Shown here: positions 4,329 through 26,413 of the stretch, in pieces
How positions within the stretch are numbered: position 1 is the stretch's first letter
How the letters are laid out: each line of letters begins with the position of its first letter
Source: Podarcis liolepis
Taxonomy: Eukaryota
Assembly (NCBI GenBank): GCA_965112155.1
Contig: OZ218108.1
Length of the DNA: 64,000 nt
Reading direction: 5' to 3' (one strand)
The notes under the pieces: generated by a model
The model's database searches: none
What the model was told of the DNA's origin: nothing
The model's input: the letters and a program-made list of their open reading frames with translations, nothing else
Translations under genes and position numbers: made by a program

Positions 4329-4523
4329 NNNNNNNNNNNNNNNNNNNNNNNNNNNNNNNNNNNNNNNNNNNNNNNNNNNNNNNNNNNNNNNNNNNNNNNN
4401 NNNNNNNNNNNNNNNNNNNNNNNNNNNNNNNNNNNNNNNNNNNNNNNNNNNNNNNNNNNNNNNNNNNNNNNNNNNNNNNNNNNNNNNNNNNNNNNNNNNN
4501 NNNNNNNNNNNNNNNNNNNNNNN
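4329..4523. other. Assembly gap (N run)
   Basis: 195 consecutive N. Confidence 0.99.
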
Positions 4524-7500
4524 GCAGAAGGTCTTTGGCGGTGTCTTTTTCTTAACTTGTGTCTTTTCTTCTTTTGAAGAAAGTAATGGCTTAAGTCTGA
4601 CTGAAGAACAATCTTTTTTTTTTGTACATTCCTTATAAGGATTTACTTATGGTTCACAGATTTTTTATCCACCATCTATGTCTGCAGTCCTTTGGATTTT
4701 AAATAGTATATAGCCTACTGCAAACAAGAGGAAATGCCAAATTAAAGATTTAATGGCATATTGCTCACTGATAAAAGGTGACAAATTATATAGCAGCCAG
4801 TTAAAGCTGGTCAAACAGAATTTAAAAAATTATCAGGATTTGTTGTGCAAATGAAAAATGGGGGAGGGGGGAATTGGTGAAGCTGCCAAATTTTGAAATT
4901 AATCTAAGCATTAGGTTGATAAATAAATGAGTATTTGTTGATAGATGTTCTTAGGCATCATACATTCCAGGGTTCAGATAAGCTGAAAATTTTGAAGCAC
5001 ATGCGTAACTTTAAAGCACTCTAATAATCTTGAATAAGTTTGGTATTGGCTTCTAGCAACAGACATATCTTTTGTTCCTGTGAAGCCAGTGGCTGGGGAA
5101 ACATTAGCCTTTACAAATGATTAGGCACCAAGTCTAAAGAAAATGCAAGTCTCTTAACCTCTCTCCACTCATTTGCCTTAGTTACACATTTTTATTTTCC
5201 ACTACCCAGCTTAATTTACAAGGCAGTGAGCAGATTTGTTTATTTTATTTTTTTGTCATTGTACGCTTTACTTTTAGGGGACATAAAAGAAAATGGCTGA
5301 AAAGAAAAAAGGAGACAGATTTTTCTTCTTCATGTGTATGTCTAATATGCGTGGTCCCTTATACTGAAGTAGAGGGATAGAAGGCTGAGTCAAAATCAAA
5401 TCAATGCTAATAATATACAATGCAGACAGTACCTCCATTTTGCGTGCGTGCGTGTGTGTTTTAAGTTCATCTTCCACATCTTTTATTTATTTACCTTTAT
5501 TTAGTGGAAATATAATATTGTGCTTTTAGTATATAGCATTATTTTAATGTTGCTAGGAAAAAAAACATGGTTTACTGGCATTTTATAGACGGTAAATTGG
5601 ACGTAACCAAATGAGCCCAGGAGCCCTTCCAACAAGGAAAGGAAACCTTTGGATACAACCCTATATACATTAGGACTTAAATAATGATGGGGGTTTCACT
5701 GGGGAGGGAAATTTGGTTTCATATTTTTGTTGGAAGCACAATTGTTGATAGATCCATCTTATAATCTTTGGCTCTTATTGATATAATATAAGATGGATAA
5801 CATCACTTTTCTAAGATGGGTGTTCACGGTGTATTATCTTCATAGAGTGCAACAATAAGTGCTTTCATGTGCATTCAGTTTGGATGCTCACAGTAGAATT
5901 ATGAGCTGTTGGTTTAAAGTGTTTGTATTGTCTAGATTCAGAGATTGCTCAAGATAACCTGATGTCTCAAGGGAAACTTGTGTATACTATCCTAATATGC
6001 TTCTAACTTGAGAGAAGACTCGGTTACAAACAATCCCCCCCCCCGTCCTCTGTAAGATTAGCTAAATTTATCATTTAAGACTCTCATATTTTGCACTCTC
6101 AAAATGATTTTACAACAGTAGTTACTGGAGAAACACGACACTTTTGAAATATGGACAGCTTGTTAAACTTTCTGTTATCTTTAGTCCTATTCAGGTCTTG
6201 GTTTCCAAGCATGTGAAGAGGCCAGCAGGAACACATGGGGTTAACCACAGCCCTTCAAAACATACAGTTTGGCAGCATCCACTAGCTCACACGTAATTGG
6301 CCCAATCTGAAGAGAGTTCAACTTGCATTGGGTTTCCTCCAAGGGGTGGGGATAGTCTCACAGGTTTCGGTTGGCCTCTTCCTGTATTGGGTACCCATGA
6401 GTACTGAACCCCTAAACAGGACTCTTGTTGTTACCTAATGTGTTCTTTTAGGCCAGCATCTTCTGATAAGTCTGCACATGATCACCTAAGGACCGTACTA
6501 AACACAGTGTCTTTCACACCATTCGCAACAGTGGAAATGGCTTTTTAAAAAGTACATTGGAGGCATGGGGATGATCTGATTTAATTCTTTACTCCCTGCT
6601 GCAGTCCTGATCTGGATGAAGCCTCTTGCATTTGTTGTTTGTACTGGAAGAAAGCTCCAATGGGATCTCCTCCACCCAATGTAAACAGCAAAAGTGGGGA
6701 CTGGACCTGAATTGGGGCCAGAGTGGGAATGAAGCCTTAAAGCCCCCCTACCTACCAGGCCTGAGTCCTGATCCAGATCAGGACCTTGCACCTGCAATTT
6801 AGTTTTTAAAAGCCATTCATGCTTGCTAATTGTGCAAATAGCACCACATCTGGTTTCAACCTTAGCTTCACAGTGCTTCATTGACTGACAAATATTTGGA
6901 TTTGTGTTAAGCACTGGCAGCTGGTGCCCAGTAGACCTGCTGGGGCTGCTAGGATGTCACAGCGGCATGGCCAAGGAGGTCATGGGGTCATGGTCAAGTT
7001 CTGCTTTTCTCCCCACCAAGCTCATCAAGCAGCCACACAGGTTTACTGTAGCAGCAAGTTTCACACGTTTCTCCAGTATTCCATTGGAGTGGAAACTCAA
7101 CCATTCACCCAGAGTAGTTTATTCAGATGTTAACACTGGAACAATGAGGTCAGTGTGAAAAAAGACTTGCACCCACTTTTTTTAGCATGTCTGATGACAC
7201 CTAAAGACAACTTTGGGGTGCCTTTAATTTTGTCTGGTATCCCAAGCATCTACAAAATCCTTCTCTGTACTTTGTGGCCAAATCTGCAGGCATTTTCTAT
7301 TCCATGGTAGGTCCACATGAATGCAGCAGGGGCTTCCCTATTTTGTTTTAGGAGGAAGGGGGATTTTCTTTGCAGACATAGTAGGAATTCCTTATCAGGT
7401 ACTGGACTGAAGAACAAATGTAGCCTTGGTAATGTCCTACAGAAATTTATGAAATGGAGATCAGAGAACAAATGCTGGAATTTGACTCTTTAAACATTTC

Positions 7501-8089
7501 CCTTCTTTAATACAAACTATTTCTATGTAATAGGTTGTTACAAAATTCCCAGCTGGTACTGATATTCTGCTTAACAGTTTTTTTAAAAAATAATAATACT
7601 TTTATTCTAAGTGAAGCCCTAGTCAGTAAAGAAACACTGAGGTACTTTCCAATAATTGTATTTACCACTCTTTTGTTACATAAAAACTCCATAAGGAAAA
7701 TGTCTCTGCAGGGTTGCTGCAGTTTGCCAAAACAAAGAAGAATTTTCTTGCTTCTTAAAAAAGAGAAAAAAAACTGTGTTTTCCTCAGTTACATATATCC
7801 CAAAATAGGACTCATGCTCTAGTCCCCAAAGGCTTATGGTACAATAAATATATTAGTGCATCAGACCAAACATAGAGAAAATAGGCTAGTAGCACCTTAA
7901 AGCCTAATACTTTTCCTGGAACTGGACACAATTTGTTAAATGTTTTATATTATAATTTGCCCTCTTTGTGTGAGGGCAGGGAGGGTTTGCAATATTTCCT
8001 GTTGCCACATAAGATGTATTGCTTTGGGGGCATATCTGCATACTCTGGCTTGGATTTAAAAACAACAACCGTGCACTGTGTTCACTGTA

Positions 8090-8331
8090 CAGTGGTACCT
8101 CGGGTTAAGTACTTAATTCGTTCTGGAGGTCCGTTCTTAACCTGAAACTGTTCTTAACCTGAAGCACTACTTTAGCTAATGGGGCCTCCTGCTGCCGCCA
8201 TGCCGCCGGAGCACGATTTCTGTTCTCATCCTGAAGCAAAGTTCTTAACCTGAAGCACGATTTCTGGGTTAGCAGAGTCTGTAACCTGAAGTGTATGTAA
8301 CCTGAAGCGTATGTAACCCGAGGTACCACTG
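8090..8331. mobile_element. Tc1/mariner (Tigger-like) MITE
   Basis: TA TSD (8088-8089, 8332-8333). TIR CAGTGGTACCTCGGGTTA / TAACCCGAGGTACCACTG. Internal TAACCTGAA repeats. Confidence 0.9.
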
Positions 8332-8469
8332 TACTCACAAAAGCAATTCGAGTAGCTTAAAGAGAGTACACAGAGCAGCCTAGACTGTGCACAGCAATAA
8401 AACCACTCACTCATTTGCAAAGCTAAGCAGGGTCCAGTATTGTTTCAAATTGGAAGAGGGATCGTGTGT

Positions 8470-8548
8470 TGAGATTCCTGCATTGCAGGGGGTAGGACTA
8501 CATGACTATCGGAATCCCTTCCAACTCTACAGTGCTATGAGTCTGTGA
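8470..8548 (+). mobile_element. CR1/SINE 3' tail fragment
   Basis: GAGATTCCTGCATTGCAGGGGGTAGGACTACATGAC...CCCTTCCAACTCTAC, the same tail as the 39383 SINE. Confidence 0.7.
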
Positions 8549-9836
8549 TCTGGCTCCTGATGTTCCAGATAAGGGAGTCTCACTGTTTCCCCAACCACTA
8601 CCACAAGGCTACTCAACAATCATCTTGTCCCTGGAGGAGAGGAGCTAATTTTTAAAAAGTCCCCCCAGTAGCTGTTTTATTATATAGTTCAAATTTATGT
8701 TTGTTGTTTTAAATTGTTTTGCAAGGTTTGCCTGAAAGGCCGTTATACAAATATCCTAAATAAATAAACAAAAACCCCACATGAATTATATGGACTGAAT
8801 ATAATTTAAAATATAAAATTATATATACATGAGAGCATTTCAAGACTGGTCTCTAATTATTAGGTATTTTATAGATTTCCCACCTCTAACTATAGTATAT
8901 ATGCTAACGTTTTGAAAAGTTCTGTTCCTGACAGAACATCATGAAACCCTGTCACAATCTTGTTGCACTGAATCTTACGTAAGGGTGTAAATGAAACACG
9001 CTACTGCTGTATTTGGTGGCGCCTACGTGTGTTTCGGTGGGTCCTGCTTGAGTCATTCTGAATGTTCTGATGCAATGTCTTCAGTCATTGCAGCTTCCAG
9101 GCCTATTACCATAGTGTCTGTCAGTGAACAGAACTGTTCAAGCTAATGGCACATTCTTCCATTGGTGCCACTGATTGTGAAAGATTGTTCGCCCCTATGT
9201 AGTGTCTTCCATTCTTGCAATTCTCTTCTGTTTGTTCAAGCAGAAAAGACTAGCCCAGTAATCTGTAACAGAAATGGTTTTAAAGGTGCAGTGGAAAATA
9301 AATGTGTGTATATTACTCTCTCTCTCACTCCCTGTTTAAACATATTCATCATCATAAAATCTGGCATGGGCAGAGAAGTAGATAAGAGCCTTCAGAAAAC
9401 AAGTTGTGGATATGTATATTCAGCTTCTCCCTAATTATAGATAGCAGCTCTCCTGGAAAAAAAAATGGGCATGTTAAGTGCCATTTATCTTCCAGTTGTA
9501 ACTTTTGCTTTGACCCATACGAATGAAGCATTTTGTCTTCCTTTATATCTCTTGTATAAATTCACATTATAGGGCATCAATACAACATCTTCTGTTTCTG
9601 CAAATGCAGTAGAAGGACAGGATAAAAAACAACTTACACAAAAAAAAAATGCGGAGGGGGCTGCAGGGAGAAGGGCAGCCACCAAAATGGTATTCTGCCC
9701 CTATTCTGTTGACAAATTTATTTCTTTAGTAGACAGAAAACATTGGATGCAACATTATAAAAATAAACTAATCATTACACATGTTCGAAACTATAAAGGT
9801 GTTGCATGAAACTTTATGCTTCCTTACCACCCAAGA

Positions 9837-10199
9837 ATTGATGCTTTTGAATTATGGTGCTGGAGGAGACTCTTGAGAGTCCCATGGACTGCAAGAAGAT
9901 CAAACCTATCCATTCTGAAGGAAATCAGCCCTGAGTGCTCACTGGAAGGACAGATCGTGAAGCTGAGGCTCCAATACTTTGGCCACCTCATGAGAAGAGA
10001 AGACTCCCTGGAAAAGACCCTGATGTTGGGAAAGATGGAGGGCACAAGGAGAAGGGGACGACGGAGGGCAAGATGGTTGGATAGTGTTCTCGAAGCTACC
10101 AGCATGAGTTTGACCAAACTGCGGGAGACAGTGGAAGACAGGAGTGCCTGGCGTGCTCTGGTCCATGGGGTCACGAAGAGTCGGACATGACTAAACGAC

Positions 10200-10245: not shown

Positions 10246-11766
10246 ACCACCCAAGATATAATTACGTTCTTTTAGGAAAAAAGCAAGGCCAATGAGATCT
10301 TCCAGAGGAGCAGTTCTATTCTCCTTGAATCAAAAAGTTCTGCAGTATTTTGTTATGGAGCAGCACTTCTATGCAGATCATCTGCGGCTATGGACAGCCA
10401 TCAGTGTTAACACTTTTGAAGGTCTGGCTGTTTCTGCTGAATCTTTAACAGTTGCAGTATGGTTTTGTTTTGTTTTTGTTGACACCAGATATCAATAATT
10501 GAGGATCTCTTATATTGTGTGGGCTTCCACATGAGCAGATAGAGTGGGTTGGATTCAAGATCTGGAAAGCAGAGTTCTGCTTATGGACAGCATGCTTCTG
10601 ACACCTGCTAATGGAAAGGGGAAGCTGATTCCCCCCCCCCCAATTTCCTCCTTTTCCCTTCAGAAAACAGTGAACAGTGTGGAAGGGGATGCAGAATTGC
10701 CTTCTAACTTTAGTAGAAGTCTTCACTAGAACAGTGTTTCCCAACCGGTGTTCCGCGGCACACTAGTGTGCCGTGAGACACCGGCTGGTGTGCCGTGGGA
10801 GGGAGGCGGGCGAGTCGGGCGCCTAGGAGAGAACAAAACCAAGTGAGCAGCGCGCGAGAGGGAAGCGACCCGAAAAAGAAGCGCGTTCGGAGTCCGGAGG
10901 CACTTTTGGGGCTGTGTACGAAGGGAGGGGGGGGCACGGACGGCGGAAGGGGGCGGGGCGCGGTTGCAGAAACCCGCCAATGCTTCCACCTCATTGGGAA
11001 AGGGAAGGGGTTGGGCCACCTAAAACTCTCCGCCGGGGCCACATCCTGCCTCCCAGCCCCCTTTCCTCCACCCACGGAGGGAGGGATGTTTTTAACACAC
11101 ACCCCCCCGCTCACAACCCTTTGGTAGCGTTTCTCCAATCTGAGGCGAGCGCCCGCCGACGCCCCCTTCCCCTGCTCAGTCGCGCAAAAACCGAAGTCTC
11201 CTCCCTACCCCTTATTCCCTCAAACCCCGTTTCCATAAGGGGGGGGGGGAATAACCCCTTCCGTCGCGCGCAAAGCCCAGCTCCCTCCGCCCTTCGCGGT
11301 CTCCTCAGCACTTCAGCCAGCCGTTTACACTCTCGGAGCCACTGGGCAAAACTCGCTCTCAGAAGCGCGCGCGCGCGGAGAGAAAGAGAGAGGGAAACAA
11401 AGTTAACTTGTGGGGAGAGAGAAAGAGCGAGCGGGAGCTAACTTGTGTCCAAAGGCAGATACAAAGTAGCCCCCCCCCCCGCCCCGAAGGCGACCTCTCT
11501 TGCTCTGCTCCTCTGGGGTGGGGAAACCAACTCCACCACGCGGAGCAGCCCCGAGGCGGGGAATTTCGCCCCTTCGTAATGTATGCATGTAAATGAGGCG
11601 GGCGCAAGGGGTGGGCGCGGAGAGGAACTCGCGCCTCTGAGGCCGCCGCCTCCTTCTCCTCCTCCTCCGCCCCCCCCTCAAACCCAGGCGGCGGCGGCGG
11701 CAGGAGGCAGCAGCGGCAATAACAGAAGCAGCTGCGCTGACAACAACACGTGTTCGCTCGGGCACC

Positions 11767-11894
11767 ATGGAATTCGAGGAGCTGGGGATTCGGGAGGAGT
11801 GCGGCGTGTTCGGGTGCATCGCCTCCGGCCTGTGGCCCACGGAGCTGGACGTGCCCCATGTGATCACGCTGGGGCTAGTGGGGCTGCAGCACAG
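11767..11894 (+). pseudogene. PPAT: Transposon-captured copy of PPAT (amidophosphoribosyltransferase) coding exon 1
   Basis: GGCACCATGG Kozak context. Reads [42 protein letters not shown](R), i.e. the 11-aa propeptide plus N-terminal nucleophile Cys of vertebrate PPAT. 128 nt ending AG|GTAGGG at a phase-2 donor. Lies inside the hAT TIRs, and no PPAT exon 2 (GQESAG...) is seen downstream. Confidence 0.9.
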
Positions 11895-11985
11895 GTAGGG
11901 GACACGGCGGTGGGGGGGGAGACGGTCTGGGGAAGCGGGGGGAGGGTGGGTTGCTTGCGAGACAGCGGAGGAGGAGGAGGCCGGC

Positions 11986-12177
11986 ATGTCCGGGCAGCAG
12001 CAGCAACAGCAGCAGCAGCAACTCCCGGCGACGGCTCCTCCTCTGCCCGCTATCGCCGCCGCCTCAGCTGCCGCCGTCCCTCAGTCCCTCGCTCTGCTGC
12101 CTCCTCCCACCCCGGCAAGGGGAAGGGAAAAAACTTTCACTTTTGTGCGTCCCTCCCGGCGTGACGCTGCGCGCTGA
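11986..12177 (+). other. Unidentified poly-Q/Ala/Pro first-exon-like fragment in the hAT cargo
   Basis: (GGA)n leader, GCCGGCATG start, then MSGQQQQQQQQQLPATAPPLPAIAAASAAAVPQSLALLPPPTP. Resembles a low-complexity N-terminus from a different gene. Source not recognised. Confidence 0.4.
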
Positions 12178-12463
12178 CGTCACGGGGCGGGGCTTTAATG
12201 GTGGTGTGCCGTGAGATTTTTTTCCGGTAAACAGGTGTGCCGTTGCCCAAAAACGTTTGGGAAACACTGCACTAGAATGAAGGCCTTTGGATTCATGAAA
12301 GAACTCTTGCTGTGAGTGAAAGAGCATCTTTGGATCCAGCCCACTGTTTATAGAGCAGGGTTCCTGTATTGGGGCTTTGCCACCAAAGCAACAAAAAAAT
12401 GGCAGCTTTATGGAGAAAGGCAAGAGAAAGTAGAGCAACAGTAGAATTTGCAAATGCAATATA

Positions 12464-12724
12464 CCGTATTTTTTGCTCTATAAGACTCACTTTTTCCCTC
12501 CTAAAAAGTAAGGGGAAATGTGTGTGCGTCTTATGGAGCGAATGCAGGCTGCGCAGCTATCCCAGAAGCCAGAACAGCAAGAGGGATTGATGCTTTCACT
12601 GCGCAGCGATCCCTCTTGCTGTTCTGGCTTCTGAGATTCAGAATATTTTTTTTTTCTTGTTTTCCTCCTCCAAAAACTAGGTGCGTCTTGTGGTCTGGTA
12701 CGTCTTATAGAGCGAAAAATACGG
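12464..12724. mobile_element. Tc2/pogo-like MITE
   Basis: TA TSD. TIR CCGTATTTTTTGCTCTATAAGAC vs GTCTTATAGAGCGAAAAATACGG. Internal 25-bp perfect inverted repeat. Confidence 0.88.
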
Positions 12725-24287: not shown

Positions 24288-26413
24288 TTTTTTTTTTTAT
24301 AAATTTTTTATTGGTTTTACAAAAATTTTTAAGACAATACAAACATATAAAAAGATATACAAACACGTATAATTTCATAACCTTTTTTTTCATAAACCGT
24401 GTTTCTCCGACTTCCCCATACCTCCCCTTTCTGCATCCCAATGTCCAAAAGTTTTTAGCAACTCTGAATATATCTGTCAATCCTCTGTCCTCTTAGTCTT
24501 TCCTTCAACCTAGTCTTATATCACTGTATCCCTTTCTTACTCAAACCTCGACATTCTAACATTCATCAAGTTTATAATAGTCCTTAAGGTAGATTTTGAA
24601 TTTCTTCCATTCTTCTTCCGCCGTCTCCTTTCCCTGATCGCGGATTCTGCCAGTCATCTCAGCTAATGTCATATAGTCCATCACTTTCATCTGCCATTCT
24701 TCCAGGGTGGGTAAATCTTGTGTCTTCCAATACTTTGCGATGAGTATTCTTGCTGCTGTTGTAGCATACATAAAGAAAGTTCTGTCCTTCTTTGACACCA
24801 ATTGGCCGACAATGCCCAAGAGAAAGGCCTCTGGTTTTTTAGGAAAAGTACATTTAAGTATCTTTTTCATTTCATTGTATATCATTTCCCAGAAAGCCTT
24901 AATCTTCGGGCATGTCCACCAAAGGTGATAGAAAGTACCTTCAGTTTCTTTACATTTCCAACACTTATTGTCAGGCAAATGGTAGATTTTTGCTAGCTTG
25001 ACTGGGGTCATGTACCACCTGTAAATCATTTTCATAATGTTTTCCTTTAAGGCATTACATGCCGTGAATTTAATACCGGTGTTCCACAACCATTCCCAGT
25101 CAGCAAACATAATGTTATGACCAATGTCCTGTGCCCACTTAATCATAGCCGATTTGACTGTTTCATCTTGTGTATTCCATTTCAGCAGCAAATTATACAT
25201 TCTTGACAAATTCTTAGAATTGGGTTCTAACAGTTCAGTCTCTAATTTTGATTTTTCCACCTGAAAGCCAATTTTCCTGTCCTGTTTAAAAATCTCCATT
25301 ATTTGGTAATATTGAAGCCAATTTTGTACTTTAGGTTTCATTTTCTCATGACTTTGTAATTTCAATTTATCTCCCTCCTGTTCCAAGATTTCCCAATACT
25401 TCGGCCATCCGACCTCCATATTGAGTTTCTTCAATGCCTTAGCCTCCACGGGTGACACCCATCTAGGGGTTTTGTTTTCCAACAGATCTTTATATCTTAT
25501 CCAGACATTAAACAATGCTTTTCTAACAATATGGTTTTTAAAGGCCCTATGCACCTTGATTTTATCATACCATAGATATGCATGCCAACCAAATGCATTA
25601 TTGAAACCTTCCAAATCCAAAATGTCTGTGTTCTCGAGGAGCATCCACTCTTTCAGCCAGCAAAACGCTGCTGCTTCATAGTACAATTTTAAGTCCGGCA
25701 GGGCAAATCCCCCTCTTTCTTTAGCATCTGTCAGTATTTTAAATTTAATTCTGGGCTTTTTGCCCTGCCAGACAAATTTCGAAATATCTTTCTGCCACCT
25801 CTTGAAACAATCCATCTTCTCAAGAATCTGCAAGGCTTGAAACAAAAATAACATTCTAGGCAATACATTCATCTTAATCACTGCAATTCGGCCTAACATT
25901 GACAATTTCAAATTTGACCATATTTCTAGATCTTTTTTAATTTCTGACCAGCATTTTTCATAATTGTCCTTATACAAGTTCAAATTTTTTGATGTCAAAT
26001 AAACCCCTAGGTATTTCACCTTCTTAACCAGTGTCAAACCTGTCTCTTCTTGAAATTTCTCCTTCTCCGCGGCTGTTAAATTTTTTTCTAAGACTTTAGT
26101 TTTTTGTTTGTTCAGTTTAAATCCAGCTACCTGGCCAAATTGTTGAATTATCTCCAACACCCTTTTCGTACTAGTGTCAGGCTCTTGTAGAGTCAATACT
26201 AAGTCATCTGCAAATGCCCTTAACTTATAATGTTTATCTCCGACCTGTATACCTTTAACCTGCTGGTCATTTCTAATCATATTCAGCAACACCTCCAGAA
26301 CTGAAATAAAAAGCAATGGGGAAATTGGGCATCCCTGTCATGTTCCTTTTTCTATCCTGAGTTCCTCAGTTACCACATTATTTACAATTAGTTTGGCTTT
26401 TTGTTCAGAGTAT
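24288..26413 (-). mobile_element. 5'-truncated L1-clade LINE (ORF2 RT + C-terminal zinc knuckle, 3'UTR, poly-A)
   Basis: 586-aa ORF 24556-26316 with RT motif AFADDL, KYLG, GRIAVIKMNVLP, GGFALPD and CWKC..FYHLWWTC. Poly-A tail seen as T-run ~24287-24298. Candidate TSD ATTTGAAT at 24280-24287 and 26414-26421. Confidence 0.93.
24556..26316 (-). CDS. L1 ORF2 fragment (reverse transcriptase C-half), truncated copy
   Basis: ORF-track protein has canonical L1 RT motifs. The frame continues upstream through GT*QGCPISPLLF, with one TGA at 26338-26340. Confidence 0.85.
   Translation of the reverse strand: MLFISVLEVLLNMIRNDQQVKGIQVGDKHYKLRAFADDLVLTLQEPDTSTKRVLEIIQQFGQVAGFKLNKQKTKVLEKNLTAAEKEKFQEETGLTLVKKVKYLGVYLTSKNLNLYKDNYEKCWSEIKKDLEIWSNLKLSMLGRIAVIKMNVLPRMLFLFQALQILEKMDCFKRWQKDISKFVWQGKKPRIKFKILTDAKERGGFALPDLKLYYEAAAFCWLKEWMLLENTDILDLEGFNNAFGWHAYLWYDKIKVHRAFKNHIVRKALFNVWIRYKDLLENKTPRWVSPVEAKALKKLNMEVGWPKYWEILEQEGDKLKLQSHEKMKPKVQNWLQYYQIMEIFKQDRKIGFQVEKSKLETELLEPNSKNLSRMYNLLLKWNTQDETVKSAMIKWAQDIGHNIMFADWEWLWNTGIKFTACNALKENIMKMIYRWYMTPVKLAKIYHLPDNKCWKCKETEGTFYHLWWTCPKIKAFWEMIYNEMKKILKCTFPKKPEAFLLGIVGQLVSKKDRTFFMYATTAARILIAKYWKTQDLPTLEEWQMKVMDYMTLAEMTGRIRDQGKETAEEEWKKFKIYLKDYYKLDEC

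What the first reader, a model, noticed from the sequence alone, without database searches (positions are those of the whole stretch)
10724..12277. 'Pack-hAT': a DNA transposon that has captured a housekeeping-gene first exon (PPAT) and CpG-island DNA
Seen: 13-bp TIRs, subterminal GTGTGCCGT repeats and a perfect CACTAGAA TSD enclose ~1.4 kb of CpG-rich DNA. It holds an undamaged PPAT exon 1 with 5'UTR, Kozak ATG, propeptide, catalytic Cys and GT donor plus intron start. Keeping intron sequence indicates DNA-level capture, not retroposition. Known: PPAT normally sits head-to-head with PAICS, not in an ARL15 intron. Gene-fragment capture by TIR transposons is well known in plants (Pack-MULEs) and much less documented in reptiles. 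Inference: this is a recently mobile non-autonomous element that moves promoter/first-exon cassettes, possibly one of a family.
Basis: partly seen in the sequence, partly recalled or inferred. Interest (0 to 1): 0.9.

Follow-up and report, generated by a model that had tools for sequence, protein, structure and literature searches.

The report
Lizard hAT transposon carrying PPAT exon 1
A 1.5-kb jumping gene of the hAT type in a wall-lizard genome has picked up the promoter region and first exon of the purine-synthesis gene PPAT, has multiplied to roughly 10-40 near-identical copies, and landed at this spot so recently that four other sequenced samples still show the empty site.

Summary
Window 10732-12269 is a transposase-less hAT element. 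It has perfect 13-bp inverted ends, an 8-bp target duplication (CACTAGAA), four GTGTGCCGT subterminal repeats and a CpG-island interior. That interior holds an intact PPAT exon 1 with its GT donor.

Public reads add three points:
- **Empty site.** All four runs laid (three organism labels) carry an allele with one CACTAGAA, so the insertion is recent.
- **Backbone.** The ends belong to a family of roughly 2,000 copies. The right 313 bp, with the polyQ ORF and CRE/GC box, is family backbone, not PPAT cargo.
- **Cargo.** The 1,135-bp cargo (10822-11956) is itself present about 10-40 times, nearly identical, and joined to the same arms.

Three Podarcis muralis UniProt gene models start with the identical 42 residues and continue differently. 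One continues into this element's right arm.

This is a multicopy, recently mobile Pack-hAT, a kind already described in animals (Tan 2021), where multicopy cases are rare.

Earlier notes of this scan list many other first-exon-carrying hATs in this genome; I did not check them.

Not shown: the parental PPAT locus, the ARL15 context, the autonomous partner, and transcription.

The parts
10724..10731 (.). Left copy of the 8-bp target-site duplication CACTAGAA
   Evidence: the empty allele keeps a single copy (joint 10723->12270, 8 letters fit both sides).
10732..10744 (+). Left terminal inverted repeat CAGTGTTTCCCAA
   Evidence: exact, and paired only with 12257-12269 on the minus strand.
10732..10821 (+). 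Left arm of the hAT family backbone. It holds GTGTGCCGT at 10766-10774 and 10788-10796, an inverted copy at 10756-10763, and a 24-nt palindrome at 10741-10788.
   Evidence: One search gives depth of about 2,900 reads in bin 10732-10808, falling to about 260 and then about 20-30. Joint 10821->12171 (98 reads) marks a short MITE-like form. Cargo contigs start at 10792-10797, about one k-mer inside the arm.
10822..11956 (+). Cargo: 1,135 bp of CpG-island DNA present about 10-40 times per genome
   Evidence: raw-read depth is 19-57 per bin against about 0.7-1.3 for single copy. Logan contig depth ratios to the flank contig are 9-13 (X1), 12-21 (X2) and 13-35 (X15). Contigs differ from the window by 0-1 substitutions per piece. 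CpG o/e 0.77.
10822..11640 (.). Upstream part of the cargo, promoter-like (CCAAT/ATTGG and GC boxes). It is presumed to be the PPAT upstream or PPAT-PAICS intergenic CpG island; its origin is unverified.
   Evidence: sequence and GC-skew pattern; no Pfam domain in any ORF. The assignment to PPAT/PAICS is inference.
11641..11766 (+). Putative PPAT 5'UTR ending in the Kozak-like caccATGg
   Evidence: The TSS is not mapped; this is inference.
11767..11894 (+). PPAT exon 1 coding part: 42 codons plus 2 nt, with the 11-residue propeptide and catalytic Cys12
   Evidence: ORF. (30/32 identity to PDB amidophosphoribosyltransferase, E 8e-15). (100% identity over 42 residues to P0001 and P0002 of Podarcis muralis).
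11895..11956 (+). GT donor and the first 62 nt after the exon, presumed to be the start of PPAT intron 1
   Evidence: the cargo/right-arm boundary at 11957 is marked by a depth step, loose ends, and the break in X1 record 3.
11957..12269 (.). Right arm of the hAT family backbone, 313 bp. It holds a (CAG)n/polyQ ORF at 11986-12177, TGACGTCA at 12175-12182, a GC box, and GTGTGCCGT at 12204-12212 and 12235-12243.
   Evidence: depth rises from 506 through 736 to about 1,780 reads per bin towards the end, against about 30 in the cargo..
12068..12164 (+). Second exon of gene model P0002 (UniProt A0A670KLX4), encoded in the right arm. It implies a 173-nt GT..AG intron at 11895-12067 inside the element.
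   Evidence: the tail CRRPSVPRSAASSHPGKGKGKNFHFCASLPA is encoded exactly at 12069-12161, and the junction codon is AG (11893-11894) + C (12068).
12257..12269 (-). Right terminal inverted repeat
12270..12277 (.). Right copy of the target-site duplication CACTAGAA

Best explanation
Window 10732-12269 is one copy of a non-autonomous hAT transposon of the Pack-TIR ('Pack-hAT') kind, in a Podarcis wall lizard or a close relative.

**Structure.** The backbone is a 90-bp left arm and a 313-bp right arm. It belongs to a family of roughly 2,000 copies. In one lineage of that family the interior was replaced by 1,135 bp copied as DNA from the 5' CpG island of the host gene PPAT. That piece holds promoter-like DNA, the 5'UTR, the ATG, 42 2/3 codons, the splice donor and about 60 nt of intron.

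**Mobility.** The chimera remained mobile. A hAT transposase supplied in trans recognises the 13-bp TIRs and the GTGTGCCGT subterminal repeats, and cut-and-paste gives 8-bp target duplications. The chimera amplified to roughly 10-40 nearly identical copies. The copy in this window is a very recent insertion, because the unoccupied allele is still found.

**Shown:** the TIRs, the TSD and the lack of a transposase; the PPAT identity of the exon; the multicopy arms; the multicopy, homogeneous cargo joined to both arms; the empty allele; and further copies annotated as short genes.

**Inferred:**
- The trans-acting transposase.
- That the left 0.8 kb of cargo is contiguous PPAT upstream DNA.
- That the captured promoter fires and that the exon-1 donor splices to downstream acceptors, in the right arm or in host DNA.
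For: - **Anatomy:** the TIRs, TSD and subterminal repeats are. No Pfam domain is found in any ORF of the element.
- **PPAT identity:** (E 8e-15, 30/32 identical).
- **Empty allele:** joint 10723->12270 skips 1,546 nt with 8 shared letters. It appears in X15, X2 and X1 as one contig each, at the depth of the flanks (73.8, 13.1, 8.57), and in 2 raw reads of X24.
- **Family size (X24, about 1.9 Gb read):** the left-arm bin holds about 2,890 reads, the right-arm bins about 1,770, the cargo bins 19-57 (mean about 32) and the flanks 0-3.2.
- **Same architecture in the multicopy set:** cargo contigs begin 25-30 nt inside the left arm in all three contig runs. They end 20-28 nt inside the right arm in X2 and X15.
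- **Youth:** cargo contigs differ from the window by about 0.1-0.2%, including a private CpG>TpG at 10915. The flanks differ by 0.85-1.35%.
- **Short form:** joint 10821->12171 is seen in 98 reads.
- **Other copies:** P0001, P0002 and P0141 of Podarcis muralis share the identical 42 residues and have three different tails. One tail is encoded in this right arm, one differs from it by 2 residues, and one is not encoded in this window at all.
- **Precedent:** Pack-hATs, and a GC-rich bias of multicopy Pack-TIRs, are reported in animals (PMC8277862).
Against: - The capture breakpoints, any microhomology, and the PPAT/PAICS origin of 10822-11640 are therefore unproven.
- Logan word depth is not a true copy number, and the raw-read estimate rests on about 1x coverage.
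- In organism A the main cargo contig leaves the window sequence at 11957 and runs on for 763 nt of unknown sequence. The multicopy unit there may differ, or that contig may be the parental locus.
- The filled junctions were not confirmed with reads from the source individual.
- No autonomous element with these TIRs was identified.
- Transcription is inferred only from the shape of the gene models.
Confidence: 0.85

Rival explanations
1. The same Pack-hAT, but formed by macrotransposition rather than template switching. Two separate hAT copies inserted on either side of the PPAT promoter and exon 1. The transposase then used the outer end of each and moved the whole interval as a composite. 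The inner ends were lost later.
For: hAT elements are abundant in lacertid genomes and often lie in or beside genes (PMC9498476). The two arms are unequal in length, 90 bp against 313 bp, and the right arm shows graded copy number. Both could reflect two different donor elements.
Against: There is no internal TIR anywhere in the element, even allowing 2 mismatches. A short form joining 10821 to 12171 exists in many reads. The two arms are therefore the two halves of one ordinary non-autonomous element whose interior was replaced.
Confidence: 0.1
2. This is the genuine 5' end of PPAT, or an assembly misjoin or collapsed repeat placed here by error.
For: The exon is intact with its promoter-like upstream DNA. 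The junctions were not checked with reads from the source individual.
Against: Exact TIRs are bounded by an exact 8-bp duplication. A clean empty allele with one copy of the 8-mer is found in four runs. The same exon and cargo are present at multicopy depth in those runs. There is no exon 2 downstream. Other copies are annotated in P. muralis. A misjoin would not create a target-site duplication.
Confidence: 0.02
3. An old, immobile relic. The capture and all its transpositions are ancient, and the apparent empty site is a precise deletion.
For: The cargo family is present in three organism labels, so the capture itself predates their separation.
Against: hAT excision normally leaves footprints (established knowledge), and here the empty allele is footprint-free. 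This copy differs from the family consensus by about 0.1-0.2%, while its flanks differ by about 1% between samples. The TIRs and TSD are perfect.
Confidence: 0.03

Closest known systems
Animal Pack-TIRs, in particular the multicopy Pack-hAT-N8_XT of Xenopus tropicalis (Tan et al. 2021, PMC8277862)
   Same: A non-autonomous hAT with a host-gene fragment from a 5' region between its arms. It moved by transposition to unlinked sites with distinct TSDs, and the captured DNA is GC-rich.
   Different: The frog case carries 291 bp of 5'UTR in 3-5 copies, and only 4 multicopy cases were found in 100 animal genomes. Here the cargo is 1.1 kb, with promoter-like DNA, a complete coding first exon and a splice donor. 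It stands at about 10-40 near-identical copies, and an insertion polymorphism is shown. The paper's main text mentions no lizard; I did not read its species list.
Pack-MULEs of rice and other plant Pack-TYPE elements (PMC8903248, PMC5861414)
   Same: The same logic applies: TIR elements that acquire host gene fragments, prefer GC-rich 5' ends of genes, amplify them, and give chimeric transcripts.
   Different: The superfamily differs. Mutator has 9-10-bp TSDs and long TIRs, whereas this element has an 8-bp TSD and 13-bp TIRs. The host kingdom also differs.
Ssk-FB4 of Drosophila melanogaster (PMC8277862)
   Same: A young, polymorphic, multicopy Pack element that carries 5' upstream DNA together with the coding sequence of a host gene.
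   Different: Ssk-FB4 carries an almost complete gene, lies in a Foldback/MULE-like element and has 4 copies. This element carries only exon 1 and is a hAT.

Membership tests
hAT superfamily (non-autonomous member) | 8-bp target-site duplication | tested here: met
   CACTAGAA lies on both sides. A single copy remains in the empty allele.
hAT superfamily (non-autonomous member) | Short TIRs (about 10-25 bp) beginning with YARNG | tested here: met
   A perfect 13-bp TIR, CAGTGTTTCCCAA. The YARNG rule is from my own knowledge of the superfamily.
hAT superfamily (non-autonomous member) | Short subterminal repeats, presumed transposase-binding sites | tested here: met
   GTGTGCCGT occurs four times in the two arms, plus one inverted copy. 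The window has 5 matches against 0.09 expected. Binding was not tested.
hAT superfamily (non-autonomous member) | Target consensus nTnnnnAn | tested here: inconclusive
   CACTAGAA fits at position 7 only. Its reverse complement TTCTAGTG fits at position 2 only (sequence). The consensus is from my own knowledge.
hAT superfamily (non-autonomous member) | An autonomous partner with the same ends that encodes a hAT (DDE plus dimerisation domain) transposase | not testable with these tools
   No tool searches this genome. There is no transposase in the element and no other family copy in the window.
Pack-TIR / Pack-hAT (as used in PMC8277862) | TIR-element sequence on both sides of an internal non-TE segment | tested here: met
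   The arms are at about 1,800-2,900 reads per bin and the interior at about 30.
Pack-TIR / Pack-hAT (as used in PMC8277862) | The internal segment derives from a host gene | tested here: met
   PPAT exon 1, 30/32 identical to a solved amidophosphoribosyltransferase. The origin of the upstream 0.8 kb was not tested.
Pack-TIR / Pack-hAT (as used in PMC8277862) | A parental copy is identifiable elsewhere in the genome | tested here: inconclusive
   The exon is present in samples that carry the empty allele, and in other gene models. The PPAT-PAICS locus itself could not be fetched.
Pack-TIR / Pack-hAT (as used in PMC8277862) | Multicopy class: several copies with distinct TSDs | tested here: inconclusive
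   Multicopy depth, and gene models from other copies, are shown. The TSDs of the other copies could not be read.
Pack-MULE | Mutator-type ends (long TIRs) and a 9-10-bp TSD | tested here: not met
   13-bp TIRs and an 8-bp TSD.
Retrocopy / processed pseudogene | Intronless cDNA copy with a poly(A) tail and without the promoter | tested here: not met
   Promoter-like upstream DNA, the GT donor and post-exon sequence are kept, and there is no poly(A).

The most novel reading that the evidence does not exclude
This element is one instance of a genome-wide process. A currently active hAT family in Podarcis repeatedly acquires CpG-island promoters with first exons (PPAT here). First-stage notes, none of which I checked and only the RANBP9 one followed up by another agent, name PRKAR2A, UBE2G1, ZNF704, TAL1, GNAL and RANBP9 elsewhere in this genome. 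The family amplifies these pieces to tens of copies and scatters ready-made promoter, first-exon and splice-donor cassettes that splice into host genes. That would be a vertebrate counterpart of rice Pack-MULEs. The unmethylated-island cargo might itself favour continued mobility.
Probability: 0.4. Interest if true: 0.8.

Novelty: new member of a known kind. Interest (0 to 1): 0.65.

Why it matters
- Cut-and-paste transposons that are still moving are uncommon in amniotes.
- Gene-capturing Pack elements that go on to multiply are rare in animals: 4 multicopy cases in 100 genomes in PMC8277862.
- Each copy of this element carries a CpG-island promoter, a start codon and a splice donor. Each insertion into an intron is therefore a natural "promoter and exon trap" that can create chimeric transcripts or new first exons.
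- The insertion polymorphism makes the system usable in wall-lizard population data, both to measure transposition rate and selection and to look for the autonomous transposase.
- On the practical side, at least three short "glutamine amidotransferase type-2 domain" proteins of P. muralis in UniProt appear to be models built on transposon copies, not genes.

Tried and rejected
Neither the parental PPAT locus nor other copies could be fetched as DNA.
- **The search of earlier findings by sequence** gave nothing.
- **Other family copies in the window:** none found by blastn or pattern search.
- **Pfam** found no domain in ten ORFs of the element. The 43-residue exon is too short for the GATase models.
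- **Rfam** gave only sub-threshold miRNA-like hits, and those lie in the neighbouring MITE.
- **ARL15 context:** motif scans of the six-frame translation found no Arf/ARL15-type exon, so it is unverified.
- **PAICS:** no PAICS-like coding start is visible on the minus strand of the cargo. The PAICS assignment of the left cargo is left as inference.
- **"Mosaic of several promoters" reading:** partly rejected. The right-hand promoter-like and polyQ segment is high-copy backbone.
- **Literature:** searches found no report of gene capture by hAT elements in lizards. The first search was wasted on "hatchling".
- **Other hits:** these are ordinary vertebrate PPAT exon-1 ORFs. Some look mammalian or human-like (for example P0145). 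I only read the protein letters and did not follow them further.
- **Caps:** Read laying and the look-up of sequencing runs were each capped at one call, so RNA evidence and organisms C, D and F were not examined.

Full report
**1. The observation.**
- The sequence shows an 8-bp direct repeat, CACTAGAA, at 10724-10731 and 12270-12277.
- Immediately inside it lies a perfect 13-bp inverted repeat, CAGTGTTTCCCAA, at 10732-10744 and 12257-12269. These are the only two exact matches in the 64-kb window.
- GTGTGCCGT occurs at 10766, 10788, 12204 and 12235. The window has 5 matches against 0.09 expected from shuffles. An inverted copy and a 24-nt palindrome sit in the left end.
- The 1,538 bp between the duplications have 64% GC and CpG o/e 0.81, against 0.25-0.32 in the flanks.
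- The ORF at 11767-11895 follows caccATGg and is closed by CAG|GTAGGG.
- Its residues 12-43 match the mature N-terminus of a solved amidophosphoribosyltransferase at 30 of 32 positions, E 8e-15.
- None of ten ORFs in the element has a Pfam domain, so there is no transposase.

The ARL15 context is not: I found no ARL15-type exon in the window.

**2. What public reads show.** I laid three sets of Logan contigs (X15 = organism E, X2 = organism B, X1 = organism A) and one raw WGS run (X24 = organism B, about 1.9 Gb read) on 10347-12656.

(a) Empty site.
- In all three contig sets, one contig at the depth of the flanks (73.8, 13.1, 8.57) runs from 10347 to 10723 and continues directly at 12270. It skips 1,546 nt, with 8 letters that fit either side. 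Two raw reads of X24 show the same joint.
- This is an allele with one CACTAGAA and no footprint, that is, the site before insertion.
- Contigs drop minor variants, so I cannot say whether a filled allele also exists in these samples.

(b) The ends are highly repeated.
- In X24 the bin 10732-10808 holds about 2,890 reads.
- The bins 12118-12271 hold about 1,770 reads each.
- The flanks hold 0-3.2 reads.
- At 10732, 1,433 reads carry unrelated upstream letters (agreement 0.38), which means many different insertion sites.

(c) The element has three layers.
- Depth falls to about 260 in 10809-10885 and to 19-57 in 10886-11886.
- It then rises to 102, 506, 736 and 1,785 towards the right end.
- A joint 10821->12171 in 98 reads marks a short, MITE-like form of the family.
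- Loose ends, and the break of X1 record 3 at 11957, mark the inner limit of the right arm.
- I therefore read 10732-10821 as the left arm, 10822-11956 as cargo and 11957-12269 as the right arm.
- The right arm holds the (CAG)n/polyQ ORF, a TGACGTCA site and a GC box. It is family backbone in hundreds of copies, not part of the PPAT capture.

(d) The cargo is itself multicopy.
- Raw reads give about 32 reads per bin, against about 0.7-1.3 expected for a single copy.
- Logan depth ratios of cargo contigs to the flank contig are 9-13 (X1), 12-21 (X2) and 13-35 (X15).
- The tool warns that word depth is not a copy number, so I give only a range of roughly 10-40.
- These contigs start 25-30 nt inside the left arm in all three contig runs. 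In X2 and X15 they end 20-28 nt inside the right arm. Most copies therefore have the same architecture as the window.

(e) The copies are young.
- Cargo contigs differ from the window by 1-2 substitutions per 1,035-1,130 bp.
- One of these is 10915, where every read and contig has C and the window has T, a private CpG>TpG change.
- The flanks differ by 5-8 substitutions per 590 bp (0.85-1.35%).

**3. Other copies in annotation.**
- A search of 1.84 billion representatives with the 43-residue ORF gave two best hits that are 100% identical over residues 1-42 and then diverge exactly at the exon end.
- With a third cluster member, they are UniProt entries of Podarcis muralis named "Glutamine amidotransferase type-2 domain-containing protein": A0A670I8T7 (P0001, 60 aa), A0A670KLX4 (P0002, 74 aa) and A0A670HW21 (P0141, 79 aa).
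- The tail of P0002 is encoded exactly at window 12068-12161, in the right arm. This implies a 173-nt GT..AG intron inside the element.
- The tail of P0141 is the same stretch with two substitutions and another acceptor, so it comes from another copy.
- The tail of P0001 is not encoded anywhere in the window, so it comes from a third locus where exon 1 is joined to foreign sequence.
- This places the window in Podarcis or a very close relative, which is inference. It shows at least two more copies independently of the read depth.
- It also suggests that the exon-1 donor is used in transcripts. That too is inference: I could not see what evidence lies behind the models.

**4. Mechanism.**
- Shown: a transposase-less element with hAT-type ends and an 8-bp TSD, host-gene cargo, amplification, and a fresh insertion.
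- Inferred: a hAT transposase acting in trans moves it.
- Macrotransposition between two flanking copies is less likely. There is no internal TIR, and the two arms are joined directly in the short form.
- Retention of upstream DNA, the donor and about 60 nt after the exon, with no poly(A), excludes retroposition.

**5. Comparison with what is known.**
- Tan et al. 2021 (PMC8277862) found 370 Pack-TIRs in 100 animal genomes, 208 of them hAT. Only four were multicopy (three in Xenopus tropicalis, one in alligator), and those favoured GC-rich DNA.
- The paper's main text mentions no lizard. I did not read its species list.
- My literature searches found no report of gene capture by hAT elements in lizards.
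- hATs are the main DNA transposons of lacertids (PMC9498476).
- This is therefore a new member of a known kind. It is notable for its copy number, its complete promoter, first-exon and donor cassette, and the demonstrated empty allele.

**6. Context within the scan.**
- Earlier first-stage notes on this same genome list many "Pack-hAT" candidates with CpG-island or first-exon cargo: PRKAR2A, UBE2G1, ZNF704, TAL1, GNAL, RANBP9 and others.
- One of them (RANBP9) was followed up with a similar verdict.
- One note describes a 491-letter hAT with "5'UTR, ATG, polyQ", which fits my reading of the right arm as backbone.
- I could not read those sequences, so whether they share these arms is untested. 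They are leads, not support.

**7. Limits.**
- No tool searches this genome.
- Still open: the parental PPAT-PAICS locus, the capture breakpoints, the TSDs of the other copies, the autonomous partner, expression, the 763-nt continuation of the organism-A contig beyond 11957, and confirmation of the filled junctions in the source individual.

Noticed in passing
window 12464-12724: A 261-bp MITE lies 190 bp right of the element. It has about 23-bp TIRs (CCGTATTTTTTGCTCTATAAGAC / ...GTCTTATAGAGCGAAAAATACGG) and flanking TA dinucleotides. Read depth is about 6,000-10,000 per bin in X24, several times that of the hAT arms. Its central hairpin gives sub-threshold miRNA-like Rfam hits (mir-3156, 43 bits against a gathering score of 76).
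   Followed up: partly
UniProt A0A670I8T7, A0A670KLX4, A0A670HW21 (P0001, P0002, P0141): Three short Podarcis muralis proteins named 'Glutamine amidotransferase type-2 domain-containing protein' appear to be gene models built on copies of this transposon: PPAT exon 1 joined to right-arm or foreign sequence. They are probably annotation artefacts or chimeric transcripts.
   Followed up: partly
window 11957, run X1 (organism A), record 3: The 1,616-nt multicopy contig that carries the cargo in organism A leaves the window sequence at 11957. It continues for 763 nt of sequence that is absent from the window. This could be the parental PPAT intron or a longer-cargo variant.
   Followed up: no
window 10746 / 12224: About 115 raw reads join 10746 to 12224 on opposite strands. 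This suggests family members with a hairpin-like or head-to-head arrangement of the subterminal regions.
   Followed up: no
window 24700-25450, minus strand: Stop-free stretches here look like the C-terminal part of a LINE ORF2 (for example ...ILIAKYWKTQDLPTLEEWQMKV...). I saw them only in a motif scan.
   Followed up: no
window 4329-4523: A run of 195 N (assembly gap or masked).
   Followed up: no
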